Part shown: positions 1,813-62,901 of the stretch, piece by piece
Layout of the letters: each line of letters opens with the position of its first letter
Numbering within the stretch: the first letter of the stretch is position 1
Assembly: GCF_006345805.1 (NCBI RefSeq)
Contig: NC_042998.1
Span: 182,838,001-182,902,000 of the forward strand
Direction of reading: 5' to 3'
Length of the DNA: 64,000 bases
Origin: Octopus sinensis
Taxonomy: Eukaryota
Notes under the pieces: model-generated
Database searches by the model: none
What the model saw: only the letters and a program-made list of their open reading frames with translations
Told to the model about the DNA's origin: nothing
Program-made: the position numbers and the translations under genes

Positions 1813-1842
<30 letters not shown>

Positions 1843-1847
<5 letters not shown>

Positions 1848-2065
1848 ATCCAAACAAGAAAACACAAAAAAAAAACCACAAAAAAAACACAACAACGCGA
1901 GGACGTGGAACAAATAAAGTATTATTGGACGCTCAGGAAAGAAGGGAAGAAGGAGGGTTAAACGTTTCGATCGGAGCTCTTCGTCGGAAACATAGGAGAA
2001 GGAAAGATCCAGAGAAGGGAAGACAGGGGAAAAAAATCGCCAACGGTAAACACGAGGTCACATAT
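1843..2065 (-). mobile_element. Penelope-like terminal-repeat fragment with hammerhead-like motif (CCGACGA core, about 1956-1993)
   Basis: Near-identical to 31538-31735. The minus strand reads TGTTT-CCGACGA-AGAGCTCCGATC-GAAACGTT. Confidence 0.6.
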
Positions 2066-6925: not shown

Positions 6926-6943
6926 AAAAGAAACATTATATAC

Positions 6944-10765: not shown

Positions 10766-11271
10766 CAAAGCCTAAATACATCTATTTTAGTTTCATTCTT
10801 CATCCATAATGTTCTGTGTTGTGTTTTACTGTGCGATTCCCGTTTCTCACCACACGAAATACAAACCTTCACGGAGGGGATATGTACACCAATATTTTGA
10901 TATAAACAATATAACTTAATTCAATTACAATAATATCACCATGCAAACATGAACAAAAACACCACGATAAAACATTTCTTTCTGACTGTTTCGTTCACCA
11001 GATAATTGATAAACAAAATAAACGCGTTTCTATTCCATTGCTGGGATGCGAAGAAAAGGTGACATTTCATACATACAGAAAAAAGTGAAGATTAAAAGAA
11101 AAATATTATTTTGTTTTTATTCAAGTGTTTTTAAGAAAAGAACAATTTGAAATAAGGACATCCTAATTTCAAATCTCTGCGTGTAAATATATATACATAT
11201 ATATATATGTTGTGAAGGAAAACCAAGCAGCAAGTCCCTCGTTCACCCCAGATACTGCTCTTTTGTATAAT

Positions 11272-11631
11272 ATGTCGCTCACTAATTGTTCCGACCTTGG
11301 TGATTCAAAAACCAACACCTCCGCCTCTTATGATTACAAATGCGAAGATCGACAATGGAATGTATTTCTTATGTCCAGTTTGATTACCTTCTCATCGGGG
11401 TTAGTTGTTATTATTATATGTCGGATAGTTAATTTACTGTGTTGTCGTCACAGAAACAATCCAAATGTCGCGGCGAACAGTAAATCTCTGGCAGCAGCTG
11501 GCCAAGGGGCCGCTGCTACTGGACAGAAACCTTTTCTCAGGACATCGGACCCTGAAATCGGGTGGATGACTGAAGCTAAAGATTGGGCGGGTGAATTAAT
11601 ATCCGGACAAACTACAACAGGACGAATCCTG
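11272..11631 (+). CDS. slo: First coding exon of BK (Slo1, slowpoke/KCNMA1) large-conductance Ca2+-activated K+ channel alpha subunit: extracellular N-terminus, S0 helix, S0-S1 linker; partial gene
   Basis: ORF 11212-11730 contains [25 protein letters not shown] (S0), LLCCR and [23 protein letters not shown], which matches the invertebrate Slo1 motif I recall (Drosophila [25 protein letters not shown]). First ATG is at 11272 (A at -3), with an in-frame stop upstream at 11164-11166. Similarity ends exactly at CTG|GTAAGT (11631/11632, phase 0). The start codon is less certain than the identity; a possible acceptor CCCCAG| lies at 11251. Confidence 0.93.
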
Positions 11632-14282: not shown

Positions 14283-14692
14283 CTTTACTCTTTTACTTGT
14301 TTCAGTCATTTGACTGCGGCCATGCTGAAGCACCGCCTTTAATCGAGCAAATCGACCCCAGGACTTATTCTTTGTAAGCCTAGTACTTATTATATCGGTA
14401 TCTTTTGCCGAACCACTAAGTTACGGGGACATAAGCACACCAGCATTGGTTGTCAAGTGATGTTGGGGGAACAAATGCTGACACACAAACATATACACAC
14501 ACACATACATACATACATATATATATACACATATAGGCTTCTTTCAGTTTCCATCTCCCAAATCCACTCACAAGGCTTTGGTTGGCCCAAGGCTATAGTG
14601 GAAGACACTTGCCCAAGGTGTCACGCAGTTGTACTGAACCCAGAACCATGTGGTTGATAAGCAAGCTACTTACCAGACAGCCACTCCTGAAG
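14283..14692 (-). mobile_element. SINE family A, full length
   Basis: Reverse complement of the 6552-6925 structure; closely matches 22737-23132. Confidence 0.82.
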
Positions 14693-15490: not shown

Positions 15491-15970
15491 CATCATCATC
15501 ATAATCATCATCATACGTCCGCTTTCCATGCTAGCATGAGTTGGACGATTTGACTGAGTTCTGGCGAACCAGATGGCTGCACCAGGCTCCAATCTGATCT
15601 GGCAGAGTTTCTACAGCTGGAAGCCCTTCCTAACGCCAACCAATCTGAGAGTGTAGTGGGTACTTTTACGTGCCACTGGCACGAGGTCAGTCAGGCAGTA
15701 CTCGCAGCGGCCACACTCAAATGGTGCCTTTTATGTGCCACCTGCACAGGAGTCAGTCCAGTGGCATTGGCAATGACCTCGCTCGAATGTTTTTTTCACG
15801 TGCTACCAGCACAAGTGCCAGTATGGCAAAGCAGGTAACGATCACACTCGAATGATGCTTTTTACATGCCACCGGCACGGAGGCCAGCTTGTTGCTCTGA
15901 CCCCGATCTCACTCGTGTGGTACTCTTAGTGCTCCACTAGCACGGATGCCAGTCATCGAATTTGATTTTG
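15491..15970 (-). mobile_element. Family B: 5'-truncated RTE-like LINE 3' end (or derived SINE) with (GAT)n tail and internal tandem modules
   Basis: CCAACCCATGCTAGCATGGAAAGCGGACG..(GAT)n tail on the minus strand; repeated GGTGCTTTTTACGTGCCACCGGCAC-type modules. Other copies: 17699-18052(-), 20515-21090(-), 36147-36495(-), 48377-48660(-), 54705-55128(+), 56330-56435(-), 59376-59629(+), 60368-60689(-). Confidence 0.7.
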
Positions 15971-19600: not shown

Positions 19601-21140
19601 ACTTCAGCTTTTCAAAACCAATGTGTGAGTTTTTATGTGGTCAATCCACCCAATAGATTAGCAATTGAATCTTCTTCCTAGTCTCTCATTTTAAAATAGA
19701 TAGATAAAAAGGTCAGATTGGATAATGTAACCATAGATATACAAAAAAAATGGGATGATTGGGCTGACTTGCAGCTAAACACTAACAACTAAACTCCATT
19801 CTAGTCACTGTATTACTGTATCAATCAGACTATCAGATGTTTTTATACACCCTTGGTCATGATATGCTTCCAGTTTTTCTTGATTGCACCATTTTTGTCA
19901 ATCTTGGCTGTAAATGTATAACTAAATCATCTTCCTATCATCATATTGGCCTTCTGAGTGGTCCTTTCTGATCTCTTGGGTACCACTCGACAACTGCACA
20001 GATTCACATGTTGACCATGAATCTTGTGACATGTCTGGTTTGGCAGAACTTGTGCTTTTGTTATTCTGAAATCGCATCATCCACTCTATGCCATTCTCAA
20101 ATTATCTCATTTTTGGATATTCTTTTGGATATACAGCTGTATTTTTTTTTTTATATAAAAGATTTTTCGATATACAGCTTAGAGCTTTATAGAATGAGTA
20201 AAAGAATACAATTTGCCTCTGTGCATCACTTTTGTTATTTTAGCAAGAAGCTTTAAATTAGACAGTGCAAAAAGTATCTTCAACATTTTACCACCTTTCT
20301 TAGAAATTAATGTAAAATCACCAATTCCATTCAGCCATTCTTTGATCTACTACTGGATGACAACTCAGCATATCATTATTAGTTTGTTGTAGGACTATCA
20401 GTCCATGTTGGTCAATTGCAGGTTCCATGAGTGAGTGATTACCTTAGATATAATATTTAGCCAGGTTAAAGTATAGCTGTCTCTTGCAAGTAAGTATGAC
20501 TTGGTAACATGTGCCATCATCATCATCATCATCAAAGTCCGCTTTCCATGCTAGCATGGGTTGGATGGTTCAACTGGGGTCTGGGAAGCGAGGAGGCTGC
20601 ACCAGGCTCCAATCTGATTTGGCAGTGTTTCTACAGCTGGATGCCCTTCCTAATGCCAACCACTCCGTGAGTGTAGTGGGTGCTTTTTACGTGCCACTGG
20701 CACAGGTGCCAGGGGAGGCTGGCAACGGCCACGATCGGTTGGTGCTTTTTTACGTGCCACCAGCACAGAGGCCAGTCGAGGCGGTACTGGCAACGCCCAT
20801 GTTTAGATGGATCTTTTTACGTGCCACTGGCACAGGTACCAGGGGAGGCTGGCAACGATCACGATCGGTTGGTGCTTTTTAGGTGCCACCGGCACAGGTA
20901 TCACAACTACAATTTCCATTTGATTTTTATTTTCATGTTGATGTACTTAACTCAGTAGGTCTCCTCAAGCACAGCAGGTCGCCCTACGATCCAAGGTAAG
21001 CACAGCAGGCTGTCCTGTGATCCAGGGTACTTTGGATGGGCTGGGGCTTCTATGTGAAGCTGTTGCAGGAAACAGCCATGAACTCACGTTATTTGCTAGT
21101 GCAGGAAAATAATGAAGAATTTAGCAAAATAATTAATGTA

Positions 21141-21525
21141 GGCACAGGCATGGCTGTGTGGTATGAAGCTTGCTTCCAAACCACATGGTTTCAGATTTAG
21201 TGCCATTGCATGGCACCTTGAGCAAGTGTCTTCTACTATTGCCTTGGGCTGACCAAAGCCTTGAGAGTGAATTTGGAAGATGGAAACTGAAAGAAGCCCA
21301 TCATATATATATATATATGTGTGTGTGTCTTTGTCTCCCGATCACTGCTTGACAACCTCTGTTGGTTGTTTGTGTCCCTGTAACATGATAGTTCAGCAAA
21401 ATAGCCTAATAGAGTAAGTGTCAAGCTTAAAACATAAGTACCAAGGTCAATTAATTCGACTAAAATATTCAAAGTGATACCCCAGCATGGCCGCAGTCTA
21501 ATGACTGAAATCAGTAAAAAAAAAA
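21141..21525 (+). mobile_element. SINE family A, full length
   Basis: Head, core, internal (TA)/(TG) tract and tail all present. Further copies: 45810-45960(+), 50437-50815(-), 51288-51655(+), 52345-52555(+, tail only). Confidence 0.8.
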
Positions 21526-22220
21526 AAATAAAAGAATAACAGAATGTTAAGCTGAAGTTTGAAACATAAATTAGCACAAAATTTAGATGGAAGGTTTTTA
21601 ACTGTAGATGACTCTATAATAGGAAATTTGTATCATAAATCCAGTATCAGCCACCAACAAATTGATATGGAAAGGGTTAAAATCCTTCAAAGTAATTGAT
21701 TAGAAGACCGAGGCTGGTGTTTGAGCAAAGGGTCTAAGAGGCAGTATCAAGTAGAATGACAGGATAAGTAGTGTCAGATACATCACTTGGGTTTATGTAG
21801 GACTTGCTTAAAATCCGCCCTCTGTGCGGACTTATAGGCTAGCTCATGCAATTCGAAACTAAAGAGAGCAATAATAGTTAAGCATTTATTGGTACCCTAC
21901 CAATGTGGTATTGCCTTACCTATATAGTATTACTTTAAACTCAGTTTAGATTTTTTAAAAACTTGTAAGTTCACATTTTTGGAGTTCTTTTAAAATTTGA
22001 ATTTTCAACAGTTTGCATATAACAAATCCTCATCCCAACCTGATCCTAATGCTAGATGTTCAAGAACCAAGAACCAAATTAAGGGCAGATTTTCAATCCC
22101 AGGATCATCTTGATTCCAAAAAGGTATATGTCTATGTAGAGCAAATGTAAACCGAGATACAGGGGTCTTGGACAGACAGACAGACAGACAGACAAACAGA
22201 ATTTCATGTTTATTATTATA

Positions 22221-22736: not shown

Positions 22737-23132
22737 CTCTTTACTCTTTTACTTGTTTCAGTCATTTGACTGTGGCCATGCTGGAGCACCACCTTTAGTC
22801 GAGCAAATCGACCCCAAGACTTATTCTTTGTAAGCCCAGTACTTATTCTCTCGGTCTCCTTTGCCGAACTGCTAAGTTACGGTGACGTAAACACACCAGC
22901 ATCGGTTGTCAAGCGACGTTGGGGGGGGAGGACAAACACAGACACACAAACATATACACACACATACATACAACAGGCTTCTTTCAGTTATCGTCTACTA
23001 AATCCGCCCACAAGGCTTTGGTTGATCCGAGGCTATAGTAGAAGACACTTGCCCAAGGTGCCATGCAGTGGGACTGAACCCGGAACCATGTGGTTAGTAA
23101 ACAAACTACTTACCAGACAGCCACTCTTGCGC
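22737..23132 (-). mobile_element. SINE family A, full length
   Basis: Closely matches 14283-14692. Confidence 0.82.
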
Positions 23133-24618
23133 CTATATAAGTTGTAATGTTTTTAATTTTTTGACTGGCTTTGACAGAGATGGAAAGAGACAGCTTTAGA
23201 GCTTTTTAGGTCCCCCCATGGTTTGAAGAAAGAAGGAGGAGGAAATTATCCCCAAACTAAAGATCTGGCCTGCATGTTTTACATGTAGTAGCTTCAGCTA
23301 AAGGCACTTGGGTTGAACTTTGCTGTTATATCTGAGACTATGCACATTTTGTTTATGTTATCCTTATTACAGGGCTTCTGAGACTGGTGAGGGGAAAATG
23401 ACACAAATCTTGAATCTTAGATTTGTCTTCGGAGTAAACACTTCCATTACAAGGATTAACTTCGAAAGAGTGCCTATTCTGCTATGAGAACCAAGTGTGG
23501 TCTTAAATCAAGTGAAAGATTAAATTCCCTGACCCAACAATATGTGCCATCTATCCAGTAGGCTTCTGTACTGTTTCTGTATGTATTGAATTTCATTCAC
23601 AGAGCTCAAAGCTTAGGTTCACCCAAGATTATGGTAGAAGACATCCGAGGTACAGTACAGTAAGATAAACCTAAAGCCATGCAATTTCAAAATAAAGTTC
23701 TTAATGTATGGACATGTCTGTGCCCTATTTTACTGGGAGTTGAGATTCATTTGATTGATAGATTCCTTTATTTGGTAATAGTTAGGCATCATAGTTAAGA
23801 TTACTCCTTAAAGTAATAATGGGAGAATTGTTTCCTATTGGTAAATAGATCACAGGGAAGTGATTGGAGGAAATCAACTGCCATAAACCAGTTTAATGCG
23901 CAATTTGAGTAAAGCTGAGTGTAAATGATTTTAAAAATAACTACTGTTTTGAACTCATCTTCATCTATTTTTATTGAATATTCCTCTGTCCGCACCCACT
24001 TCTGCTCACCTTTTACCTTGAGGTGCCACCTGGACACCTCAGTACCACCATTTATCTCTTATCAACTACTGTTGATATATTCTCTCTCTTTCCTCTAAAT
24101 ATGAGTAGTCATATAGCTCCTCTTCAAGAAACAGCTCTGCTCTATCTCCTTCTCTCATACCTTAGCTTTCATCCACCATCATAAAGTCCTACCGACCCCT
24201 GAGATTCCAGTCTTGTGAACTGCATGGTGACCTCACTAATGCTAGTGACATGAAAGAAAAACACCCAATACATATTGTAAAGTGGTTGGTGTTAGGAAGG
24301 GCATTCAGTTCTAAAAATCATGACAAAGCAGACACTGGATCTTGATGCAGTCCTTGGATCCATTAGATCCTATCAAACCATCCAGCCTATGCCAGCATGG
24401 AACATGGACATCAAATGATGATTGTAATTCATTTTCATCAATTTTTATTCAATAAATTCTTTAATCCTATTTGCAATCCTTGCTGTAACATACCACCCAT
24501 TAAACCCTATTGTTACCACCTCAACTATTATTTGTCAACTCATCTACTTTGGCTTCTGGTTCCAACTACTTCTAACCCAGCTATGATTTTCCATCCCAGT
24601 TACTATCTGCTATTTATC

Positions 24619-25539: not shown

Positions 25540-26164
25540 CAAGACTAGTCAGGCCATAACCCGTGGCCCCTACCTGGGACGTAGTCAGTCCACCTGTGCA
25601 TACCTTCCTTCTTGTGACACTTGTGAAGACCTGTTGAGGCAAGTGAAAATCAAATCAAATCAAAACAAACCAAAATAGATGAACATCAATGGAATTTGTA
25701 TCTTTGTGGTACCAGTGCCGGTGGCACACAAGAAAATCATCCGAAAGTGGCCGTAGCCAGTACCGCATAGACTGGCCTCCGTGCTTTGGGGACGTAACAA
25801 ACACCATCCGATTGTGGCCGTCCGCCAGCCTCATCTGGCACCTGTGTCGGTGGTGGCACATAAAAACACCATCCGAGCGTGGCCGTCTGCCAGCCTCGTC
25901 TGGCACCTGTGTCGGTGGCACATAAAAACACCATCCGAGCGTGGCCGTTCGCCAGCCTCGTCTGGCACCTGTGTCGGTGGCACATAAAATCACCCACTAC
26001 ACTCTCGGAGTGGTTGGCGTTAGGAAGAGCATCCAGCTGTAGAAACACTGCCAGATCTGACTGGCCTGGTGCAGCCTTCGGGCTCCCCAGACCCCAGTTG
26101 AACCGTCCAACCCATGCTAGCATGGAAAACGGACGCTAAATGATGATGATGATGATGATGATGA
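25540..26164 (+). mobile_element. Longest family B copy (RTE-like 3' end) with about 5 internal modules
   Basis: Two near-exact 62-bp modules at 25857-25918 and 25919-25980; ends in ..GGACGCTAAATGATGATG. Confidence 0.72.
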
Positions 26165-27189
26165 TACGCTTGCATTAAATTCAATTAATTATTTATGATT
26201 AGATTACCATAGAGATAAAGACAAAATTTACAAAAAGGTATTGTTTTCTTGTAAAAGGAAATGATTATGGGTATTAGAATTAATCTGGGTGGTAAATTTA
26301 ATCCATTGTTGGTTTAACACAACAATGTGGTTTTGGGTACCTTCAGTTAAGTTCACTCTGTTGCAAGCTTTCAGGAACCAATTCTCCCTTCCTCCTACTA
26401 GTCTTGGAGGCCCTGAAAAGAAAAAGAGTTATGATCACTGCCCTTTTCTCCAAGGCCAAATAGTAAAAAACAAAATTTACTATTATTTTTTATGACTAGA
26501 TTTTGCACCACCTAGAAATAAACCAAAATTTGAGGCTCTTAAATCATTCCAGGGTTCTGATAAGAATAATAGTTTGAACAACAAACAGTGGCTCAGATCA
26601 GATTCCTGGAAGTAAACAGTGTAAAGATTGTTTCATACTTAGCTCTGTAGTTGTACAGAAAATACCTCCTAATAGTTATCTCAAAAATTATTCTGTAATA
26701 GGCACTTCGTGATTTACTTTCACTTAACATTACTAAACTGCTGATTATACAAACTCAAAGAAACAAACTCACAATAAGACTAAAATGACCAAAGTTAAAT
26801 TTTTAAACTTATTATTCTTTTGGATAACAATTCCATGTTTACCATGCATGTTCCAAATAACCTAGATTGCATTACAAATTTACAAATACTAGATTTCATT
26901 TCCATATTAGAAAATACTTCAGTCCTGAACAGCTGTCCACGTCATGAAAAATACAACTATACTGTATTGTGGATTTAATCAAACAGCTGGTATGGGACAC
27001 CCCATTGCATGCTTATATTCTAAACTGCATCTAAAAATAGGTCATTTGCTTGACAGACAATTCTTTATTTGTAAACATTGTGCTGTTAGCTAGTATGTCA
27101 CCAGGAGAGTCATGAAATCACATGTTGCTTATTCTAGGTTGTAACTGCCATCTCTTTTTACACCTCTTAGGTGAGATACAGTTCTTCAA

Positions 27190-30272: not shown

Positions 30273-31250
30273 TGGAACACCTCCAAGACATCCACCTCGC
30301 CAATGACATCCCCAGTCTCATGCCATTTCCGCTCTACTGGTCACTTTTTGCAATACCTGTCCATGTTCGGATTGTCCTTGCACAGAGGCCATCTGGACTC
30401 CCATTTGCGCCGTGAACTGGGACTAATCTTCTCTCTTCGCTCCTTTGTGCCACATGGGCTCAACTCTCTTCCCTTCTTCATCTGACCTCCTCCCCTTGCC
30501 TCTTTCCCCCTCCCACCCACCGCCTCTCTTGCTCCAACTCCTTCTCTTCATCCCTACTTTCTTTCTCTCTTACTCTCTATCATACCCACCTTCCCCTTCT
30601 CCCTTCACTGTCAACCCTCCCCCATAAGCCCCCCTACACATTCCTACCCACCTTCCTTATCCTTCCAATCCCACCCCATCCCATCACTTACACCCTCTAA
30701 CCCCACTCTTTGCCTACCCACATACCCCACCTCTACCCCCAACCCTCAGCCTAACCCACACCCCACCCATACTTTCCCCATTCTCACCTCCCCCAACTCC
30801 CAACACCATCACACCACGCCACATTACACCATACCACACAACACATCACGTCACAACACATCACCACACACACACTAGCACTGACCAATTCCCATCCCCA
30901 CATTTTCACACCTACACATACACACACGCACATGTCAAGATCACCAGCCCTCTTTCACACGCACATACGTTCTCTCTTACACACACACACACCTTCGTTT
31001 TGGGATCACTACTACTTTGTTATCTCTCCTACTTACTTCTTAGCTCTCTTGTGTGACCCTTCTGTCCAGCATTCACCATGATAGATTGGTAGCCACTACA
31101 CACATTTTTATTCTCTCCTTGTTTCTTTCTGTGTTCCTTTCTGTGGAAGAGCGTAGGCTCGAAACGTTAAAGAATTTTTCACTTCTCGAGCATTAAACTA
31201 ATACATCTGTTTATTTTCTACACCACCTGTCTTTGTCTTTTGTTTTTTTC
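30273..31250 (+). mobile_element. Penelope-like element 3' part: GIY-YIG endonuclease C-terminus, C-rich 3' UTR, terminal repeat with hammerhead-like motif
   Basis: EHLQDIHLAND/PVSCHFRSTGH..L..FGLSLHRGH.DS.LRRELGLIFSLRSFVPHGLN (frameshift near 30311; stop at 30483-30485). At 31137-31172: CTTT-CTGTGGA-A-GAGC gtag GCTC-GAAACGT-T-AAAG. Confidence 0.75.
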
Positions 31251-31256
31251 GAAAAT

Positions 31257-31535
<279 letters not shown>

Positions 31536-31537
31536 CA

Positions 31538-31735
31538 TAAGTTAATCCAAACAAGAAAGCACAAAAAATCACAACAACGTGAGGACGTGGAACAATATAG
31601 TATTATTGGACGCTCAGGAAAGAAGGAAGGAGGAGGGTTAACGTTTCGAGTGGAGCTCTTCATCAGAAACATAGGAGAAGGAAAGATTCAGCGACGAGAA
31701 GACAGAGGAAAAAAATCGCCAATGGTACACACGGA
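31538..31735 (-). mobile_element. Second copy of the 1843-2065 Penelope-like fragment; hammerhead-like motif with CTGATGA core (31636-31672)
   Basis: Minus strand: TGTTT-CTGATGA-A-GAG ctcca CTC-GAAACGTT. Confidence 0.62.
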
Positions 31736-31803
31736 AAAACCCATAGCGCGGTATTATAATATATATATATATATATATACACATATATGCATAAATATAC
31801 CAC

Positions 31804-35451: not shown

Positions 35452-38400
35452 GGTATTATTAAGGCGGTGATCTGGCAGAATCATTACCATGCCAAGCAAA
35501 ATGCTTAGCGGCATTCTGTGTGTCTTTACGTCCTGAGTTCAAATTCCACTGATGACTTTGCCTGTCATCCTTTCAAGGTTGATAAAATAAGTACCAGTTG
35601 AGCTTTGGGGTTGATGTAATTGACTTACCCCACCCCCTCACTTGCTGGCCTTGTGCCAAAATCTGAAACCCTTGTTAATATTATTATTATTATTATTTTT
35701 ATTATTATTATTTTGGTGGGCTGACAGATTTATTAGAGTATCAGTGAAAATTCTTTGAAGAAATTATTCTGGCTTCTTTTTTAAGTTCTGAGTTCAAAAC
35801 TTACTGAGGTTAACATAGCTTTTCATGCTTTCATGGGCCAATAAAATAAAATACTAGTAATGTTCTAAAATCAACTTAATCAACTAAACCCTCTCCAAAG
35901 TTTGAGACTTTGTTCTTACATAACAAATTATTATTATTTCGGTTGCTAAAGTTACTTTTGTTGCAGCCATTTATTTTCACAGTTCAGAGCATTAAGCATT
36001 CAGCTGTGAAATCTGTTTTGCCTGATGGGAAAACTGAAACAAATGTAACTTTCCTATCAGAAACCCAACATTTTCATGACCATATTTCTCACAAATACTC
36101 TACTTGTATTCTTCAATTTCTCTTGAAAATAATCAAGCATTTGAAATCATCATCATTGTTTAACGTCTGCTTTCCATGCTAGCATGGGTTGGACGATTTG
36201 ACTAAGGGCTGGCAAACCAGATGGCTGCACCAGGCTTCAATCTTGATCTGGCAGAGTTTCTACAGCTGGATGCCCTTCCTAACGCCAACCACTCCGAGAG
36301 TATAGTAGGTGCTTTTACTTGCCACCAGCACAGGTCCAGTCAGGCGGTACTGGTAACAACCTCGCTTGAATCTTTTCACACATGCCACCAGCACAGGTGC
36401 CAGTAAGGTGCTGCTGGTAACGATCACGCTCGAATGGTGTCTTTTACAAGGCCAGATAGCTGCTCTGGCAATGATCATGCTCGGATGGTGCTCTTAAAAC
36501 CCTACTTAATAATATTTGAAATATTGAAATATTTATCAAAATAACCAACTTTGTTATTTATTAAATTTGTATTAAAGTTAGATCCTTTATCAGATAAGCT
36601 AATTAGAAATAAATAACAATTAACACAGATAAAATGTATATAAATCAACAACTGTCCATCTGGTCTGTTGTTATTATTCAAAATTTAACAAAAAAGTTCA
36701 TACATTAGATTATGGTAACAGGTTTTAATTTAAATATGAACAGTTCAAAATGAAAGGATTTTTATCATGGATCCAGTGGTAGTTTCAGGTCAGTTGTTGA
36801 TATTCAAATGGTTAAGGTTGCTTCCATTGTGATTCATGGTGATAAAGCATGATGGCAGCAAATGAACTTAGAATGAGACAATTATTAGAAAGTAGTGCTA
36901 CTGTTATTGAATAGTGTCAGGCAATGCTTCCCAAGTATTCTTTTAACATGTAGTTAGCTAATCAGATATTTACAAACAGTCCAAATGTTCTCATCTCAGG
37001 TATGACTACTATTAAAAGTATGGTCTAATGATGCCAAAACATGTACAGAGTTGTCACAGGACTTCTGTCTCACCTCACCCACTATATACCCACATGGATT
37101 TAAATTCTGGGGTTGCTTCCCCTGAATTAAGCTCACTTTGGATATTATTTTAAGATTTCTTAGTTTGTTGCATTAAGTATATTAAGTACATATTTTTGCT
37201 AATTAGCCTAAGTTTTGTGATTGACACAATTTTAAACTAAGCTCATTTTTTTAACCTTTGCTTCGTTTCAAATGATATTGTTAGACCTGCCAGAAATTAA
37301 GATTCTCATTAACATAGCTTTTTGAGTTTAAAGATCATTCACTTACAATGTATAAAATGATAATTCCAAATGGTTTTAGATATTAATTACTCTTACATTT
37401 TGTGCTGTTCTCAAATTATGATCGTTGGTGTAATATCTCAGTGATTTTTGCTTAAACAATTCCTCACAAATTCCAAACTTGTTTCATCTGACATTTGATA
37501 TGTCAGTCATATGTTGGTACAACTGCCAAAATATTCTGTATGTGTCTTTGGTTCTTTCAGCACAATCTAAAACTGTAGGCCTGTGTCATCACATCACTGA
37601 GACGCATGCAGAATTGTTTATTTTAAGTATGATGTAATATGATAGTGTAGCTGAGCTAGAGACAGAAAATGTATTATAACCTTCGTCTCTGCAGCTTCTT
37701 TCATATCTATGTTGCATTTGTGTTTTGTTTTCATAATTACCTTTGACTTCTTTGACTGTCTCTGCTCCCATCAGATTTATTTGTTTATTATTTTGCTATC
37801 TTCTACCGAATGTAAACAAAGGAAATATAAAATTAATGATTGGAATCACACACAGGAAAAAGAAAATAGGCAATATATTTATAATTTTATTCCCTATCAA
37901 CATGCACTTACATACCCTCCCAGAACTATTTTACCTTGAAATAATTTGCTATTCCTAATTACCTGTTACCTGTCAGTTCTTTTGTGAAACTTACAACCTT
38001 GCTTTCTTTCTTTCCTTTTTTTCTTATTCCCCATTCCTCCTTTTCAGACAGTTATTTCTCTGTTTGTTATTAATACTACAAATATTATACTAAACTATGT
38101 GGAATTGTGGTTTCATATAATGTTTATGTCAAGATTTCAAATGATGCAATTTCTCTGGTGCCATGTGGTAAACAAAGTATTCATATCAGGTAGCGAGTTA
38201 GATCAACTGTCAGACGGAAAACATTAATTACCCAATGGTTAAAGACAATTGCAAAGATCATAATGTTTTATAGGAAATTTCATTCTTTTCAAGAATGCAG
38301 AAAATTTGGATATTTATTTACATAGTAATTAATATTAAAACTTGTCATTGTGACTTGTCTTTATTAGGCACCTAATTCTGTTGATGCTGTTGGAATTGAA

Positions 38401-48295: not shown

Positions 48296-49404
48296 TAGTT
48301 GGAAGCAAGCTTTTTAACCATGCAGCCACACCAACACCTAAATAGAAATAAAGATATAAAAAAAGAACACTGCATACATCATCATCATCATCATCATTTA
48401 ACATCTGTTGTCCATGCTGGTATGGGTTGGACAGTTTGACCAGAGCTGGCAAGCTGGAGAGCTGCACCAGAATCAGTGTGATTAAGCATGGATTCTATGG
48501 TTGGATGCCCTTCCTAATGCCCACCACTTTACAGTGTGTGCTGGGTGCTTTTACATGGCACTGCATGGGCACTTTTATGTGAGACCTCAAGGGCCCTTTT
48601 GTGTGGCACCTCACGGGCCCTTGTATGTGGAACCACACAGGTGCTTTTACACAGCACTGCCCAGTATAAGGCAGCAAGCTGGCAGAATCATTAGCACATC
48701 AGGCAAAATGCTTAGCAGCATTTCATCCATCTTTATGGTCTGAGTTCAATTTCTACTGGGATCAATTTTACCTTTCATCATTTGGATGTCAATAAATTAA
48801 GTACCAGTTGAGCACTGGTATCGATGTAATCCAATTATCCCCTCCCTCAAAATTGCTGGCCTTGTGCTAAAATTTGAAATCAATATTTATACCAAATGTA
48901 AATACTCTTTTTAAGTATTAAAATAATGCATGGACTTTGTCAAGCTGTAATTAGCTCTAGTCCTCCCCTTCCATGGATTAATTTTCAAATTAAATTCAGC
49001 TCAATTTAAATATTTTTATTACAGCTGGTTGTCCCATTATCCAGTATCATTTTATTAAATTAATAAGTTTTTTGAGTTTTTTTTTTTTTAGTGAATTACA
49101 TAATTTAATAGGTTGTACAAAAAAGACAACAATGAAACAAATATTCTGTGAAAAGTGTCAGGCAAACCTAATGGTTTCTAACATAGGCTCAAAGCCTGAA
49201 AATTGGTGGAAGGATTGGGGCTAGTCAACAGCATCAGCCCTGCTACTGGCCCAGTAGTTTATTTTCTTGAACTCAAAAGAATAAACACCAAAGTTATCTT
49301 CGGCAGGGTTTAAACTGAGGATGTAAAAAGTTGGAATAAGTACTGCAAGGTATTTCTATTGGTTTGTAATAATGCCACCAAAAATAAAGGTAAAAAATTC
49401 CAAG

Positions 49405-49961
49405 ATGTGGCTGTGTGGTAAGACATTTGCTTTCCAACCACATGGTTCCAGGTTCAGTCCCATTGTGTTGCACCTTGGACAATTGTCTTCTACTTGGATG
49501 ATTGTCTTTGATCGGCCTGCCTCAGGCCAATCAGAGTCTTGTGAGTGGAGTTTGTAGACAGAAACTGAAACAAGCCCATTGTATATTGTTAAATATTTTA
49601 ATATATTTTAATATATTTTAATTTCAATTTTTATGTATTAATTATATTAATCGAATTATATTTTCTACAATATTAATGACAATATGTATTTGAATCAAAT
49701 CTTCGATTTAAGGTTTTTTCCTCGATTTTTTACAATTTCATATTGAACTCATTTATTTGTTTTGTTTATTTTTGTTTATCGCTCGCATATGACCGTTATT
49801 TGAAAGGACCAATCAAACAAATCCATTTTTAAAGGCGTATCGTTTATACTAGTCTTGATAGAATTGTCATCTTGGTTCTATTTTAACAAAACTGTCCGAC
49901 GAACGGGAACGTGAAACTCTGAGTAACAGCTTTTGTTAAATTTCTGCTGCTTTTAAATAAA

Positions 49962-50013
<52 letters not shown>

Positions 50014-50225
50014 GTGTGTGTGTATTTGAGTGTGTATTTGTTTCCTTCTACTGCTTGACGACTGGTGTTGGTGTGTTTATGTCCCTGTGACTTAGTGGGT
50101 CAGCAAATAAGTACCAGACTTTAAAAAAAAAAATTAACTACTAGTGTCAATTCATTCAACTAAAAATTACTCAAGGCAGTGCTCCAGCATGGTTGCAGTC
50201 AAATGTCTGAAACAAGTAAAAGATT
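49405..50225 (+). mobile_element. SINE family A split at its internal microsatellite by the AT-rich hammerhead-bearing insert (about 49586-49960) and (TA)n
   Basis: Head and core at 49405-49585; tail at about 50010-50225. Confidence 0.7.
49882..49940 (+). ncRNA. Type I hammerhead ribozyme (U4C variant) in slo intron, sense orientation
   Basis: Stem I TTTAACAAAA-CTGT / ACAG-(C bulge)-TTTTGTTAAA; core CCGACGA 49896-49902; stem II ACG-GGAA-CGT; GAAA 49913-16; stem III ACTC/GAGT; GUA triplet with predicted cut after 49925. Confidence 0.72.
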
Positions 50226-52173
50226 AAAAAATCAAAATAATAAAAACATGACAAAGTATGAAAAAATACAAAAATATAAAAATTCAATTTATAAATGGCA
50301 AAATATGTCTTAATCATTTAGCATTCAGATTACTCTGTCCAATGTAATGCTAAATTTATTCACATTGTTTTTAATTAATCATGCGTTAATTATCTCCTAG
50401 CTTCGAGATTTCAGTGACATTTTTTTATCTCCTACTTGTTTCAGTCATTAGACTGCAGCCATCCTGGGGCTCTGCCTTGAAGAAATTTTAGTTAAATGAG
50501 TCAGCCCCAGTACTTAGTTTTTTTTAATCCTGGTACTTATTTTATTGGTCTCTTTTGCTGAACTGCTAAGTTACAGGGAGGCAAACACATTAACATGAGT
50601 TGTGAATCAGAAGATGGGAACAAACATAGACACAAAGACACACATAGATATATATATATATATACATACGTGATGGGATTCTGTCTACGAAATTCACCCA
50701 CAAAGCTTTAGTTGTCCTGAGGCAATAGTAGAAGACACTTACCCAAAGTGCCACACACTTGGACTGAACCCAGAAACATAGGGTTGGGAAGCAAGCTACA
50801 TACCACACAGCTATGCCATTTGTGAGAAGTCAGATCTGATTGGTTTAAACTTAAAACAGGCAGAATATTTAGGCTGGATAAAGCCAGTTTAAATGTTAGA
50901 GGCATTTAAATTATGCTAAAGTAATTAAGTAACAATCCTATTCAGAAAATTAGTATAATAATTAAAATAACAAAACCATATTACTGGCAGAATAGGTGCA
51001 AATTTCTCCCACTTATTAAAATGCTTTAATGTATTTACTATCACAATAAGTGTCAAGATTAAATCATATCAATGAATTTTCAGTTTTTTATGCTTATTGC
51101 TAATAGTAAAAACTTCATCAGTCCAAAAACAATGAGTTTTATGTCTCACACAAATGGTTAGCAAAGAAATGAGAATGAAGATTGTCACATGTTAGTTGAT
51201 ATATCAATTTGGTGTTTGTGAACAATACACTATATTTCACAAAGAAAAGTAGTCAGAGAAAAAAGGTAAACTTGATTGTGTAACATAGATGCAGGTGTGG
51301 CTGTGTGGTAAGAAGCTTACTTCCCAACCACATGGTTCTGGGTTCATTCCCACTGCATGGCAAGTGTCTTCTTCTATAGCCTTAGGTCAACCAAAGCCTT
51401 CTGAGTGGATTTGGTAGATGGAAACTAAAAGGAAGCCCATTATGTGTGTGTGTGTGTATGTGTTTGTTCCCCACCACCACTTGACAATCAGCATTGGAGT
51501 GTAACTTAGCAGTTCAGCAAAAAAGACCAATAAAATAAGTACTAGGCTTCAAAAAATAAATAAGTCCTAGAGCCAATATGTTTGACTTAAACCCTTCAAA
51601 ACAGTGCCCCAGCATGGCCACAGTCAAATGACTGAAACAAGTAAAAGATAAAAGATTTTTTGCGTATATGTTTAATCATTTAGGATGTGCTCTGTTTCTA
51701 ATGGGAAGTAGTTTAATTTTCCTTAGCAATGCTTGTAAGTGAGATTTTTGAAATGAGGAAGATAATTAGTAAAACATATATTTATATATGCAACTAAGAA
51801 TTTAATATCTCTGTTTATGAAAGCTTTAAAGATAAGACACATATGATTAAATGCTTTATTAGCAATGTTACAAAGATTCTAGATTCTTTGGAAATTTAAG
51901 ATTACTATCGACAATTACTTTATATCCTTTATATCCTTCACAAGAGCAATGATATTATCTAAGAAAAAAAAAAGACAAATAAGATTCTTGACAAAAATCA
52001 ATAGCAACAAGTTGTAAGTTCTGAAAGTTAAAACATTGAGGTTATATTAGTGAAGAGCAGATTCAGTAAAATTTGATATATATATGTGACCGAAGATTAA
52101 AGGCTTCGAATGACCCGTCCGTGTTTTTTGTATCGTCTATTTGGATGTTTTGCGTTCTTGTCCCATTTTGTAT

Positions 52174-54345: not shown

Positions 54346-55387
54346 CATATTGGGTTCAAATTTTGGCTCAAGGCCAGAAATTTCTGGAAAGTGGGTAAGT
54401 CAATTATATTGTTCCCAGTACCCAACTGGTAGTTATTTTATCAACTCCAAAGGGATGAAAGATAAAATTGATGAAAGATGGAATTCTAACTCAGAATATC
54501 AAGATAGCTGAAAAGCCACTTAGCATTTTGCCCAGTGTGCTAATGATTCTTCCAGCTCACCACCCTAGCTATCTATTTCATATTACTGATGCTTATGCAA
54601 AACATATGAATGTTAAAATCTGTTTCCTTCTAGAAAAGATCTCCTTCAATTTTCAAGCCCATATAAAGTTGATAATAGGTTCAGACCAAATATAAAATGT
54701 AAGCTGCTAGGTCTGCCTGATTGACTCCCATGCCAGTGGTACATAAAAAGCACCAGCCAAACGTGGCCAATGCCAGTACCCCCAGACTGGCTCCTGTTCC
54801 AGTGGCACGTAAAAAGGACCAACCAATCATGACTGATGCCAGTACCCCCTGACTGGCCCCTGTGCTGGTGGCACGTAAAAAGCACCATCCAAATGTGATT
54901 GTTTCCAAGCCTGCCTGACTGGCTCCTGTGCCAGTAGCACATAAAAAGCACCCACTACACTCTCAGACTGGTTGGCATTAGGAAGGGCTTCCAGCTGTTG
55001 AAACATTACCAGATCAGATTGGATCCTTGTGCAGCCACTGGCTCTCCAGACCGCTGTCAAACCATCCATCCCATGCCAGCATGGAAAACTGACGTTAAAC
55101 GATGATGATGATGATGATGATGATGATTATGACTCACTACTTATTTTAGTAATTAGTACTGAATACATATAATTTGTGTATGATATATGCATGTAATGTA
55201 CATGATGACCTTAGAAGTGAGAGAACTATATCAAAGAAACACTGTTATTTTAAAACAAAGACAATTTTTTTTTTCCCAAAAAGTTCCCTCTCTGCCTCTA
55301 ACAGAAGTGAACATCCTCAAAATTGTAGGTTCATACCAACTGTTTCACCTGCTCTCTTCCTGTATTCTTTCTTGTCTATACTACATT

Positions 55388-58629: not shown

Positions 58630-60202
58630 AATAATGAAATTTAAAATAGTTTTTTATTCCACAACCCTGCTACTGCAGATGTGATAGAATCTCCTCAGAC
58701 AGTTTATTCCATGGTTTTTATGACTTGCTAAGAATACAGATTTAATTATAATAAGTGCACCATTATTCATAGTAATCGCAATCCTGGCAATGTGATATGG
58801 CAGCATTTTCAAAGAATTCATGCCTCAGACTCATTTTCAGTTCCCTGTGACCTGATCTTCCATTTGGATTTCCTTGTAAATCTGAGACAATGTACATTCT
58901 GAGAGAAACTGTTTTACTATTAGACTGAAAACAGATAACCAACTAAATATTGTACTGAAGCTACCATCTACCACTACAGTCTCATGTCATCCATTCCTGT
59001 CTTAAATCCAATTGATTACTGATATCTCTCTACTATATAACATTCAATTCTCCCAAGAAGTGCATATACAACTTGTTACTGGTTTTACTTTATTTCTGTA
59101 GTATAAATATTTAACTCTGAAATGGCTTAGTCAGCTTTGCTGGTTTTAGGTTCTCTAAGGAATCCACTGCTCTAGACAGCAAAGTCACTGCAAATTTGAC
59201 AAGTAGTTCATTGTAGTATTGAGTTCGTCTCTACCTGAGGTTATGTCTTAGACAGAGATTGACTCTGTCAGACCAGATTGATTTTTGCTGAGACACTACA
59301 TGAAGATGGAATGTCAAGTGATACACCTATGAATTAAGAAACTCACCCCAATTCCGAGCTGCTATTATTAGCATTGCCGGTGGCACGTAAAATGCACCAA
59401 TCCGATCATGGCTGTTGCCAGCCTCGCCTGGCACCTGTGCAGGTGGCGCGTAAAAAGCACCCACTACACTCACGGAGTAGTTGGCGTTAGGAAAGGCATC
59501 CAGCTGTAGAAACTCTGCCAGATCAGACTGGAGCCTGGTGCAGCCTTCTGGCTTCCCAGATCCCCGGTCTAACCGTCCAACCCATGCTAGCATGGAGAAC
59601 GGACGTTAAACGATGATGATGATGATGATGAGTTTCCATTATTAGTACGAACAAATGCAGCTTAAATAGTATTAGGGTTAGTGTTGCAAACTGAAACTAT
59701 TGTTGCAAACATCAACTGCACTTCTACCATTCCTAGTACTAAACCCATTGTTGCAAGCATCAATAGAACAGCAGCTATTGCTAATAAAGGTAATTCCTCT
59801 GACTACATCTGCTACCACAATCTCACGTTATCCATTTTATGTTGACTCCAAATTATTACACATATCTCTCTTCTCTGTAGCATCCAATTCTTCAAAGGCA
59901 TAATTTTTTTTGTTTTTGTTTTTTTATTCTCTTTTTCCTTCATTATATCCTTGAAACCTCATATGATCCTCTATGTCATCTCCTTGGTTCAAAGCTGTCT
60001 TGTTCTCATTTAGATTTTTTTCTTTAATTATCCTTCTTTGAATATATCATTATCAAACAACTGACATGCAAAGCATATTTTTTTCAAAAGGAAAGACTCT
60101 TTTATTGTTTTGTGTTGTTTTGTTTGTTTGTCTGTTTTATGGAGGGAAGTTCCTGAACTTAAAAGAAGGGATTATATATATTTTCTACAAATCCTTTTTA
60201 TA

Positions 60203-60739
60203 TGAGGGGTGCTGAAAAGTTCCTGGCTTTAAGGGTACCATGAAAGGCTTAGTCGGAGGCCCAACCTTCCAAGTTCTTTTATAGGGCTTAGAAAAACTGA
60301 AGGGCTGCTGCAATAAGTGTGTGAATCTGAGAGGGGAATATGTTGAATAAAATTATAACTAACTGATCATCATCATCATCATTGTCGTTTAACGTCTGTA
60401 TTTCGTGCTAGCATGGGTTGGACGGTTCAACCGGGGTCTGGGAAGCCAGGAGGCTGCACCAGGCTCCAGTCTGATGTGGCAGTGTTTCTACAGCTGGATG
60501 CCCTTCCTAACGTCAACCACTCCGTGAGTGTAGTGAGTGCTTTTACATTCCACTGGTACATGTGCCAGGGGAGGCTGGCAATGGCCACGATCAGTTGGTG
60601 CTTTTTACGTGCCACCGGCACAGAAGCCAGTCAGGCAGCGCTGGCATCGGCCACGTTTGGATGGTGCTTTTTACGTGCCACTGGCGATGCCTCTATATTT
60701 TCTTTTACCCAATGCCAGGAACTTTTCAGCACCTCCTAG
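60203..60739 (+). mobile_element. Mariner-derived MITE (same family as 6082-6531) split by a family B insertion (60368-60689)
   Basis: TA|TGAGGGGTGCTGAAAAGTTCC ... GGAACTTTTCAGCACCTCCTAG|TA; the sequence resumes at CCTC after the insert. Confidence 0.8.
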
Positions 60740-62335: not shown

Positions 62336-62901
62336 TTGGGTTGTCTGGAAAGTTCGTGCCGATTTATAGTAGCTTACCTTTCGACTTATTTTAGAACATG
62401 GTTGAGTCCATAAAACAGGATTTGACTACACCTCTATTTAGAGCACAGTTTAAGCTATCTTTTCATGGAAGAAGGTTTATGTTCCTATAACCTGTGTTAA
62501 TTCTGTAATCCTTTAAAATGGAAGATAAGAAAATTCATTTTCGGCACTTGATGCTTTGGGAACCAGACAAATATTGCTGCAGCTCGGCTGGGATGTGTTA
62601 CCCCACCCCCCATATTCACCAGATACTGCTCCTTCGGATTTCCACTTATTCAGGTCTCTGCAGAATAGTCTTAATGGTAAAAATTTAAATTCCTTGGATG
62701 TCGTAAAAAGATACCTTGAGGAATTCTTTGCCATGAAACCACCTGAATTCTGGGAAGAGGGTATTTTCAAGTCAAAGGAAAGATGGAGACGCATTGTACA
62801 ACAAAATGGTTCAAATTTGGTTGATTAAAAATGTAATGGCAAGTATTTATTGATCTTTTTCTTTCCTTTAAAAATTGGCACAAACTTTCCGGACAACCCA
62901 G
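62336..62901 (+). mobile_element. Internally deleted mariner transposon (566 bp)
   Basis: TA|TTGGGTTGTCTGGAAAGTTCGTGCC ... GGCACAAACTTTCCGGACAACCCAG|TA; N-terminus MEDKKIHFRHLMLW (ATG 62518) is fused out of frame to the C-terminus with HPPYSPDTAPSDFHLF (mariner YSPDLAPSD motif). Confidence 0.92.

What the first reader, a model, noticed from the sequence alone, without database searches (positions are those of the whole stretch)
49882..49940. Near-complete self-cleaving hammerhead in sense orientation inside the BK-channel intron
All three helices can be drawn by eye: stem I of 14 bp with one bulged C, stem II with a GGAA tetraloop, and stem III ACTC/GAGT (1-nt loop, or a dimer-type helix). 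It also has GAAA and a GUA triplet. The only core deviation is CCGACGA for CUGANGA (U4C). It lies on the strand transcribed as slo pre-mRNA, ~38 kb into the intron, so even slow cleavage could affect co-transcriptional splicing or premature termination. Intronic ribozymes in neuronal genes are known (the mammalian CPEB3 HDV-like ribozyme), but I know of none described for a cephalopod channel gene. The long stem I suggests a young insertion or a maintained structure.
Basis: partly seen in the sequence, partly recalled or inferred. Interest (0 to 1): 0.75.

Follow-up and report, generated by a model that had tools for sequence, protein, structure and literature searches.

The report
Hammerhead-like motif in a transposon insert
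The hammerhead-ribozyme look-alike in the first intron of a mollusc BK-channel gene is really there, but it sits in a small, young mobile-element insertion, has a damaging core change and weak helices, and is most likely a transposon passenger rather than a regulator of the channel gene.

Summary
The motif is present exactly as described at 49882-49940 (+). It has a type I hammerhead layout: a 14-bp helix I with a bulged C, core CCGACGA (U4C), helix II ACG-GGAA-CGU, GAAA, a near-palindromic helix III and a GUA site, with predicted cleavage after 49925. It lies on the sense strand, 38.25 kb into slo/BK intron 1.

The 10.1-11.1 pair is A-U, not G-C. Helix III cannot close on a 1-nt loop (pair probability about 0.1). 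No Rfam hammerhead model matches, even at E<=10.

Context decides what it is. The motif lies 21 nt from the 3' end of a ~375-bp AT-rich insert. That insert splits a SINE-like repeat exactly at its internal (TA)n microsatellite. The insert is CpG-rich (observed/expected 2.1, against 0.45 for the window), so it is probably young.

The same window holds four other short hammerhead-like inserts, all embedded in (TA)n. One has a perfect core, and its 84%-identical sibling has the same CCGACGA.

Best reading: a hammerhead-type motif carried by a Penelope-like or retrozyme-like non-autonomous element, probably inactive as a lone copy. A host function is unsupported. Copy number and conservation could not be tested, because no cephalopod genome was available.

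The parts
49882..49895 (+). Helix I, 5' strand (UUUAACAAAACUGU)
   Evidence: Pair probabilities are 0.77-1.0 for all but the outermost pair, which is 0.40.
49896..49902 (+). Core C3-A9, read CCGACGA. C4 (49897) replaces the conserved U4.
   Evidence: This is the only match to CYGANGA-N10-GAAAC in the window.
49903..49912 (+). Helix II (ACG/CGU, 3 bp, with A10.1-U11.1) closed by a GGAA loop
   Evidence: Pair probability is about 0.49.
49913..49915 (+). Core G12 A13 A14
49916..49924 (+). Helix III, ACUC-U-GAGU (A15.1 to U16.1). It is a near-palindrome. As a monomer it forms at most 3 bp with a 3-nt loop. In a dimer it forms 8 bp around a U-U mismatch.
   Evidence: Monomer pair probability is about 0.1, and the dimer minimum-energy fold shows the intermolecular helix.
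49925..49925 (+). A17. Cleavage would be predicted 3' of this base.
   Evidence: Position follows from the hammerhead numbering applied. Not tested experimentally.
49926..49940 (+). Helix I, 3' strand (ACAG-C-UUUUGUUAAA), with C49930 bulged
49587..49961 (+). AT-rich insert of ~375 bp (25% GC) that carries the motif 21 nt from its 3' end. A 10-bp tandem (TATATTTTAA x4) lies at its 5' end. It holds 12 CpG, against 5.8 expected from composition.
   Evidence: Alignment A1 of 7 SINE-like copies shows a single clean gap. TRF. CpG counts. No other copy in the window.
49400..49586 (+). Left half of the interrupted SINE-like repeat, ending ...AAGCCCAT, plus a TGTATAT microsatellite remnant (49580-49586). 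This remnant may be a target-site duplication with 49962-49968.
49962..50228 (+). (TA)22 at 49965-50009, then (TG)n, then the right half of the same SINE-like repeat
11212..11631 (+). Coding part of slo/BK exon 1. The donor GTAAGT is at 11632, and the rest of the window is intron 1.

Best explanation
The motif is a hammerhead-type (type I) ribozyme motif carried near the 3' end of a short, non-coding, relatively young mobile insertion of about 375 bp. The insertion landed in the (TA)n microsatellite of an older SINE-like repeat inside slo intron 1.

The likeliest source is a Penelope-like-element (PLE) derivative or a retrozyme-like non-autonomous element. In such elements the hammerhead cuts multimeric or tandem element transcripts into unit lengths, often through a dimeric helix III built from two copies.

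This lone copy has C at core position 4, an A-U pair at 10.1-11.1, a 3-bp helix II and a helix III that is unstable without a partner. I therefore expect it to be inactive, or only negligibly active, in the slo pre-mRNA, and to have no host function.

Shown: the motif, the insertion and its boundaries, the (TA)n target, the lack of CpG depletion, and the presence of other hammerhead-like (TA)n inserts nearby.

Inferred: descent from a functional hammerhead lineage, the type of element, and the lack of activity.
For: 1. Motif quality is far beyond chance. About 1e-5 to 1e-6 such motifs are expected per window.

2. A1 shows that the SINE-like copy at 49400-50228 is contiguous in six other copies and is split here exactly at its internal (TA)n(TG)n by 49587-49961.

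3. Only 2.1% of + strand positions have a (TA)n locus starting within 60 nt downstream. The motif ends 24 nt before one. PLEs are reported to favour microsatellites, including (TA)n, and to carry hammerheads near their 3' ends (PMC8557442).

4. The window contains four other short hammerhead-like inserts embedded in (TA)n:
- 31541-31758 (-), with a perfect CUGAUGA...GAAAC-GU-U minimal motif.
- 1844-2054 (-), which is 84% identical to the first and reads CCGACGA at the same place.
- About 31100-31265 (+).
- 1617-1815 (+), where Rfam Hammerhead_1 scores 15.5 bits.
Two pairs of these lie tail-to-tail across a (TA)n, an inverted-copy arrangement reminiscent of those described for PLE insertions.

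5. A compact general descriptor finds 4 hits in the window, against 0.41 expected.

6. CpG observed/expected is 2.08 in the insert and 0.96-1.36 in the other inserts. It is 0.45 in the window and 0.10-0.16 in the flanking SINE halves.

7. Metazoan type I hammerheads typically have a short palindromic helix III and act as dimers (PMC4209133). ACUCUGAGU fits that pattern.

8. On inactivity: U4C is reported to decrease activity considerably in vitro (PMC3088659). Mutants of the CUGA turn had low activity, apart from a compensatory swap of the C3-G8 pair (PMC9901934). The hammerhead fold (-9.9 kcal/mol) is not the minimum-energy fold (-11.0), and the fold z-score is -0.97.
Against: - No second copy of the insert or motif was found in the window.
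- The insert does not align with the other hammerhead-bearing inserts (A2).
- The 375-nt insert has no unusual RNA structure (z=+0.13), unlike the rod-like retrozyme RNAs.
- A 14-bp helix I, a 3-bp helix II and A10.1-U11.1 are atypical for described PLE or retrozyme hammerheads.
- No Rfam hammerhead model matches. This is weak evidence, however: Rfam also misses the perfect-core minimal motif at 31636-31670.
- C4 forms a CpG in a CpG-decaying genome. It was therefore probably inherited from the source copy rather than acquired in place. That leaves open whether the family ever had a consensus core.
- Family membership at genome scale could not be tested, because no cephalopod genome is in the available collections.
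Confidence: 0.68

Rival explanations
1. Chance look-alike. The insert is an ordinary AT-rich mobile or filler sequence containing a hairpin, and the loop of that hairpin happens to resemble a hammerhead core with one mismatch. It has no descent from any ribozyme.
For: - Relaxed hammerhead descriptors with at most 1 core mismatch hit 0.4 times per 64 kb by chance.
- Long hairpins are common here.
- My estimate gives on the order of 0.1-1 such motif per genome of about 2.7 Gb (assumed size) by chance.
- Independent hallmarks are missing: U4, G10.1-C11.1, any Rfam score and fold stability (z=-0.97; the core-only 39-mer gives z=+1.63).
- Perreault et al. warn that consensus-like sequences arise by chance in large databases.
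- No homologous copy was found.
Against: - The per-window chance of a motif this compact, with a 4-bp palindromic helix III and a 14-bp helix I, is about 1e-5 or less.
- It lies in a (TA)n-targeted, CpG-rich short insert, as do four other hammerhead-like motifs in the same window. That association was not part of the selection.
Confidence: 0.26
2. A functional intronic ribozyme. The U4C hammerhead variant cleaves nascent slo pre-mRNA slowly and so tunes splicing or premature termination, by analogy with the CPEB3 ribozyme or the amniote intronic hammerheads.
For: - Sense strand, deep in a long first intron.
- Helix I is intact and the CpGs are retained.
- A natural U4C variant is reported to keep enough activity in vivo in a viroid (PMC3088659).
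- Intronic hammerheads exist in amniotes (PMC6155905).
Against: - U4C combined with A10.1-U11.1, a 3-bp helix II, and a helix III that is unstable as a monomer with no partner copy.
- No evident tertiary loop-loop contact.
- The motif lies in a recent transposon-like insert rather than in conserved intron sequence.
- Similar motifs lie in other (TA)n inserts, including one upstream of the gene, so there is nothing specific to this gene.
- The young age alone explains the CpG retention and the intact helix.
Confidence: 0.04

Closest known systems
Hammerhead motifs of Penelope-like elements (Cervera & de la Pena 2014, PMC4209133; Craig et al. 2021, PMC8557442)
   Same: - Type I topology.
- A small palindromic helix III, implying dimeric action.
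- A position near the 3' end of the inserted unit.
- Insertion into a microsatellite, (TA)n.
- Neighbouring elements in the window lie as inverted pairs.
- Low or undetectable activity is expected for a single motif.
   Different: - No RT/GIY-YIG ORF and no pseudo-LTR tandem at this locus.
- Helix I is 14 bp (PLE: 2-5 bp) and helix II is 3 bp (metazoan minimal hammerheads: 6-8 bp).
- There is no unpaired base between A9 and 10.1.
- The core has C4.
- No sequence similarity to the other PLE-like inserts in the window.
Metazoan non-LTR retrozymes with canonical type I hammerheads (Cervera & de la Pena 2020, PMC7229834)
   Same: Short (150-450 bp), AT-rich, non-coding unit carrying one type I hammerhead with a weak palindromic helix III. 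Solo monomers are known.
   Different: - Not tandem.
- The predicted RNA of the insert is not unusually self-paired (z=+0.13).
- No conserved loop 1-loop 2 nucleotides.
- Variant core.
Intronic hammerheads of amniotes (HH9/HH10; RECK, CTCL, DTNB; PMC6155905)
   Same: Sense-strand type I hammerhead inside an intron of a protein-coding gene, thought to derive from retroelement hammerheads.
   Different: Those have consensus cores, match Rfam models and are ultraconserved. This one has a core mutation, no Rfam match and lies in a young insertion, and its conservation is untested.
Natural U4C core variant in a viroid hammerhead (cited in PMC3088659)
   Same: The same substitution at core position 4.
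   Different: That variant is embedded in a tertiary-stabilised hammerhead. It showed reduced in vitro activity but enough activity in vivo. Here no stabilising contacts are evident.

Membership tests
Hammerhead ribozyme (Rfam clan CL00010), type I | Three helices around a junction, in the order I / CUGANGA / II / GAAA / III / UH / I | tested here: met
   and the descriptor scan.
Hammerhead ribozyme (Rfam clan CL00010), type I | All conserved core nucleotides at consensus (C3 U4 G5 A6 G8 A9 G12 A13 A14 A15.1 U16.1 H17) | tested here: not met
   C4 at 49897, so 11 of 12 are at consensus. Perreault et al. disqualify any hit with a core mutation.
Hammerhead ribozyme (Rfam clan CL00010), type I | G10.1-C11.1 closing pair of helix II (highly conserved, not absolute) | tested here: not met
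   A49903-U49912. Conservation is stated.
Hammerhead ribozyme (Rfam clan CL00010), type I | A helix III that is stable in cis, or a second copy nearby to form a dimeric helix III | tested here: not met
   Helix III pair probability is about 0.1. No second copy within 64 kb.
Hammerhead ribozyme (Rfam clan CL00010), type I | Tertiary contact between loop II and a loop or bulge of helix I | tested here: inconclusive
   Helix I is continuous apart from one bulged C, and loop II is GGAA. No known motif is recognisable, but such contacts are diverse.
Hammerhead ribozyme (Rfam clan CL00010), type I | Score against Rfam hammerhead covariance models | tested here: not met
   No hit at gathering score or at E<=10 on 261 nt and 71 nt. 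Controls: a perfect-core motif at 1688-1772 scores 15.5 bits, and the perfect-core minimal motif at 31636-31670 scores nothing.
Hammerhead ribozyme (Rfam clan CL00010), type I | Site-specific self-cleavage giving 2',3'-cyclic phosphate and 5'-OH ends | not testable with these tools
   Needs in vitro transcription or end mapping.
Hammerhead ribozyme (Rfam clan CL00010), type I | Conservation and covariation among homologues | not testable with these tools
   No cephalopod genome is in the collections. The attempts found no homologue.
Penelope-like element / non-LTR retrozyme | Discrete insertion, preferentially into microsatellites such as (TA)n | tested here: met
   A1. (TA)n proximity has p of about 0.02. 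Literature.
Penelope-like element / non-LTR retrozyme | Hammerhead present in every repeat unit (pseudo-LTR pair or tandem array) | tested here: not met
   Single motif with no tandem.
Penelope-like element / non-LTR retrozyme | RT plus GIY-YIG ORF (for an autonomous PLE) | tested here: not met
   The insert is 375 bp and has no ORF. A six-frame search against 5.8e9 proteins found nothing. Only a non-autonomous or 5'-truncated copy is possible.
Penelope-like element / non-LTR retrozyme | Multi-copy family in the genome | not testable with these tools
   Only the 64-kb window could be searched, and it holds no other copy.
Penelope-like element / non-LTR retrozyme | Highly self-paired unit RNA (retrozyme circRNA) | tested here: not met
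   z=+0.13 for 49587-49961.
Domesticated intronic hammerheads (amniote HH9/HH10 type) | Sense-strand intronic position | tested here: met
Domesticated intronic hammerheads (amniote HH9/HH10 type) | Deep conservation at the orthologous site | not testable with these tools
   Orthologous introns could not be retrieved. Only exon-1 fragments on contigs of about 1-2 kb were found.

The most novel reading that the evidence does not exclude
The C4 hammerhead variant is catalytically competent in vivo. For example, the long helix I and the bulged C with the GGAA loop might supply stabilising contacts, or two transcripts might form a dimer. In that case it would cut nascent slo pre-mRNA 38 kb into intron 1, giving a cephalopod neuronal channel gene a ribozyme-based brake on transcript completion.
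Probability: 0.04. Interest if true: 0.75.

Novelty: new member of a known kind. Interest (0 to 1): 0.3.

Why it matters
As it stands this is a routine outcome. Invertebrate genomes are known to be littered with hammerhead motifs carried by Penelope-like elements and retrozymes, and this appears to be one more, with a crippling core change.

Two modest points of interest remain:

1. My literature searches found no description of hammerhead-bearing elements in cephalopods. This single window shows at least five short, CpG-rich, (TA)n-embedded inserts with hammerhead-like motifs. That suggests a recently active, microsatellite-targeting, non-autonomous element class in this genome.

2. Sense-strand copies inside long neuronal introns are natural test cases for whether active ribozymes are tolerated in introns. 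A 2026 preprint reports that retrozymes are excluded from introns and exons in Xenopus. If genome-wide data showed that intronic sense copies preferentially carry core mutations such as U4C, that would be direct evidence of selection against co-transcriptional self-cleavage.

Tried and rejected
- **Rfam cmscan.** I ran it on the whole window at gathering score and on 261-nt and 71-nt slices at E<=10. There was no hammerhead hit. Control runs showed that the models give 15.5 bits to another motif and nothing to a perfect-core minimal motif, so I treat the negative as weak evidence.
- **Search for other copies in the window.** I used blastn with word sizes 9 and 11, and a pattern search allowing 3 mismatches. 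No copy was found.
- **Search for copies elsewhere.**
  - A six-frame translation of the insert against 5.8e9 proteins found nothing.
  - The pattern CNGANGAACGGGAACGTGAAAC in metagenome contigs gave 7 hits. All lie in GC-rich (53-69% GC) contigs, look like chance matches, and have no hammerhead fold.
  - The same pattern in viral contigs gave 0 hits.
- **Retrieving orthologous introns.**
  - Exact look-ups of three nearby ORFs were not on record.
  - A homology search with the exon-1 peptide found only exon-1 fragments, mostly on contigs of 1-2 kb. The best was 96% identical (UniParc UPI0006955163). All are far from the motif.
  - Conservation therefore remains untested.
- **Retrozyme idea of a rod-like unit RNA.** The structure test did not support it (z=+0.13).
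- **Homology of the insert to the other hammerhead-bearing inserts.** There is no meaningful alignment.
- **Terminal inverted repeats, to test for a DNA transposon or MITE.** None were seen by inspection of the insert ends.
- **tRNA origin of the SINE-like repeat.** ARAGORN finds no tRNA in the window, so I call it only 'SINE-like'.
- **Supplement of PMC8557442, for octopus PLE consensus sequences.** It is not held in the library.
- **Alternative core registers that would keep U4.** None exists in the sequence.

Full report

Yes. Window 49882-49940 (+) reads UUUAACAAAACUGU CCGACGA ACG-GGAA-CGU GAA ACUC-U-GAGU A ACAG-C-UUUUGUUAAA. In hammerhead numbering this is a type I layout:
- Helix I has 14 Watson-Crick pairs, with C49930 bulged.
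- The core C3-A9 reads CCGACGA, with C4 at 49897.
- Helix II has three pairs closed by GGAA.
- G12-A14 follow.
- Helix III runs from A15.1 to U16.1.
- A17 is at 49925.

The gene context also holds. The ORF at 11212-11631 aligns with the N-terminus of the Aplysia BK channel (5TJ6, E=2.8e-30). It ends in a CTG|GTAAGT donor at 11632. A tblastn probe with the rest of a BK sequence found no further exon in the window. The motif is therefore on the transcribed strand, 38,250 nt into intron 1.

**2. Is it more than chance?**

I wrote a descriptor for type I hammerheads and ran it on the window and on 400 Markov-1 windows:
- The relaxed form (at most 1 core mismatch, helices of at least 4, 3 and 2 bp) gives 0.42 chance hits per 64 kb on both strands.
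- The compact form gives 0.01.
- The compact form with helix III of at least 4 bp gives 0.0025.

The long helix I adds a further factor. That factor is smaller than a Markov model suggests, because hairpins with stems of 12 bp or more are common in this sequence, about 130 on one strand. My combined estimate is 1e-5 to 1e-6 per window, or on the order of 0.1-1 per genome of about 2.7 Gb (an assumed size). The motif is thus not expected by chance in a given window, although a whole genome might hold one by accident.

**3. Weaknesses of the motif as a ribozyme**

- Besides U4C, the 10.1-11.1 pair is A-U rather than the highly conserved G-C.
- Helix II has only three pairs, with pair probability about 0.49.
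- Helix III cannot close on a one-base loop. As a 3-bp stem with a 3-nt loop its probability is about 0.1.
- The full hammerhead fold is -9.9 kcal/mol, against an MFE of -11.0 kcal/mol.
- The 59-mer is no more stable than shuffled sequences (z=-0.97). The core-only 39-mer is less stable than its shuffles (z=+1.63).
- With 150-nt flanks, helix I is lost from the minimum-energy fold.
- No Rfam hammerhead model matches, at gathering score or at E<=10 on slices of 261 and 71 nt.
- On the biochemistry, Perreault et al. state that the U4C variant 'considerably decreases activity in vitro' and treat any core mutation as disqualifying (PMC3088659).
- Comprehensive single and double mutagenesis found low activity for mutants of the CUGA turn. 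The only rescue was a compensatory swap of the C3-G8 pair (PMC9901934).

**4. What the surroundings show**

A self-comparison of the window and an alignment of seven copies of a ~400-bp SINE-like repeat (A1) give the key result. The copy at 49400-50228 is split by a single ~375-bp block, 49587-49961. The break lies exactly at the repeat's internal (TA)n(TG)n microsatellite (...AAGCCCAT | TATA...TGTG...).

The hammerhead-like motif lies in this block, 21 nt from its 3' end. It is followed by (TA)22 at 49965-50009. TGTATAT occurs on both sides (49580-49586 and 49962-49968). This could be a target-site duplication, but it is microsatellite-like, so I do not rely on it.

The block is 25% GC and has no ORF. 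It has no terminal inverted repeats and no unusual RNA structure (z=+0.13). There is no other copy in the window.

Its CpG content stands out: 12 CpG against 5.8 expected from composition (observed/expected 2.08). The window as a whole is CpG-depleted (0.45, with TG and CA in excess). The two SINE halves around the insert are at 0.10 and 0.16. Given the window's depletion, P is about 2e-5.

The insert is therefore younger than its surroundings, or it has escaped methylation. That also explains the flawless helix I without invoking selection. Because C4-G5 is itself a CpG, C4 was more likely inherited from the source copy than gained in place.

**5. Other hammerhead-like inserts in the same window**

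While checking a second descriptor hit, I found that the window holds other short inserts with hammerhead-like motifs. All are embedded in (TA)n.

- **31541-31758 (-).** It has (TA)n on both sides and carries GUUU CUGAUGA A GAG-CUCCA-CUC GAAAC-GU-U AAC (31636-31670). This has a perfect core, an unpaired base after A9, G10.1-C11.1, and a palindromic ACGU in place of helix III. Those are the hallmarks that Cervera and de la Pena list for minimal hammerheads of Penelope-like elements.
- **1844-2054 (-).** It is 84% identical to the first. At the same place it reads CCGACGA, and its helix II is broken.
- **About 31100-31265 (+).** It carries CUGUGGA A GAGC-GUAG-GCUC GAAAC-GUU.
- **1617-1815 (+).** It has (TA)n on both sides. 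It carries UCUUUC CUGAUGA ...GAAAC-AUAU-GUC GAGAAU, which has a perfect core and the classic metazoan helix III. Rfam Hammerhead_1 gives it 15.5 bits (gathering score 34).

Two pairs of these inserts lie tail-to-tail across a (TA)n. This inverted-copy arrangement is reminiscent of those described for Penelope-like insertions, which also favour microsatellites (PMC8557442).

A compact general descriptor finds four hits in the window, against 0.41 expected. These inserts also escape CpG depletion (observed/expected 0.96-1.36). Rfam finds nothing for the perfect-core minimal motif, so the Rfam negative on the finding carries little weight.

One caution applies. In two of these motifs the minimum-energy fold is a simple GUUUC/GAAAC hairpin. 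Their ribozyme nature is therefore inferred, not shown.

**6. Interpretation**

The finding shares four properties with these neighbours:
- It is a short non-coding insert.
- It is placed in a (TA)n. Only 2.1% of positions have one within 60 nt downstream.
- It is not CpG-depleted.
- It carries a hammerhead-type motif in its 3' part.

It does not share sequence with them (A2), and its helix proportions differ from described PLE or retrozyme hammerheads.

I conclude that the most likely identity is a hammerhead-type motif carried by a Penelope-like or retrozyme-like non-autonomous or 5'-truncated element (confidence about 0.68). A chance look-alike inside an unrelated insert is the main rival (about 0.26). 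A host-serving intronic ribozyme is unlikely (about 0.04).

In the parent elements the hammerhead trims multimeric transcripts and often needs two copies to build helix III. A lone copy with C4 and weak helices II and III, in an intron, should do essentially nothing. That last step is inference from published mutational data, not a measurement.

**7. Comparison with known systems, and novelty**

Type I hammerheads in retroelements of invertebrates, their dimeric helix III and their sheer abundance are well documented (PMC4209133, PMC7229834). Sense-strand intronic hammerheads are known in amniotes (PMC6155905).

The literature searches found no description of hammerhead-bearing elements in cephalopods. 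This is therefore a new member of a known kind, not a new kind.

I could not confirm the species. The best database relative of exon 1 is a 96%-identical UniParc fragment, and the closest solved structure is from the mollusc Aplysia.

**8. Limits**

No cephalopod genome is available in the collections. Copy number, the family consensus at position 4 and orthologous conservation are therefore untested, despite several indirect attempts. These three checks and a simple cleavage assay would settle the matter.

Noticed in passing
window 1617-1815 (+), motif at 1688-1772: A ~200-bp unique segment flanked on both sides by (TA)n, upstream of slo exon 1. It carries a hammerhead-like motif with a perfect core (CUGAUGA...GAAAC-AUAU-GUC), a classic metazoan helix III and a 42-nt insertion in helix II. 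Rfam Hammerhead_1 gives 15.5 bits (gathering score 34), with E=0.27 on 121 nt.
   Followed up: partly
window 31541-31758 (-), motif at 31636-31670; window 1844-2054 (-), motif about 1955-1990; window about 31100-31265 (+), motif at 31137-31172: Three related short inserts; the two minus-strand ones are ~215 bp. All are embedded in (TA)n/(TC)n microsatellites and carry Penelope-type minimal hammerhead-like motifs. The copy at 31.6 kb has a perfect core. Its 84%-identical sibling at 1.9 kb reads CCGACGA and has a broken helix II. Copies lie tail-to-tail across (TA)n arrays. CpG observed/expected is 1.0-1.4, against 0.45 for the window. Rfam does not detect them.
   Followed up: partly
window 6555-6929, 14283-14689, 21145-21529, 22738-23136, 49400-50228 (split), 50420-50817, 51285-51655: A SINE-like repeat of ~400 bp with an internal (TA)n(TG)n microsatellite and a B-box-like GGTTCAGTCCC. 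There are at least 7 copies, 79-86% identical to their consensus and strongly CpG-depleted. ARAGORN calls no tRNA.
   Followed up: partly
window about 3240-4240: A long tandem array of a 20-bp unit (TTTTATTCGTGAACTGAA-like, about 50 copies) upstream of slo exon 1. I saw it as a run of regularly spaced hairpin hits.
   Followed up: no
window 62556-62828 (+): The ORF translation looks like the C-terminal part of a mariner/Tc1-type transposase (…PHPPYSPDTAPSDFHLF…). It is probably a transposon remnant in the intron.
   Followed up: no
window 15491-15678, 17688-18159, 20511-20958, 25655-26160 (-), 36146-36325, 48377-48563, 54646-55119 (-), 59453-59630 (-), 60368-60739: Another abundant interspersed repeat, whose copies give similar spurious ORFs (…QSDLAVFLQLDALPNANHSVSVVGAFYVP…). 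There are at least nine copies in the window.
   Followed up: no
window 26880-26925 (-): A fourth hit of the compact hammerhead descriptor (core CUGAAGU, one mismatch at A9). It is not near a (TA)n and is probably chance, since 0.41 hits are expected per window.
   Followed up: no
whole window: CpG observed/expected is 0.45, with TG and CA in excess (1.26 and 1.23). This indicates methylation-driven CpG decay in this intron. Young inserts stand out by their CpG content.
   Followed up: partly
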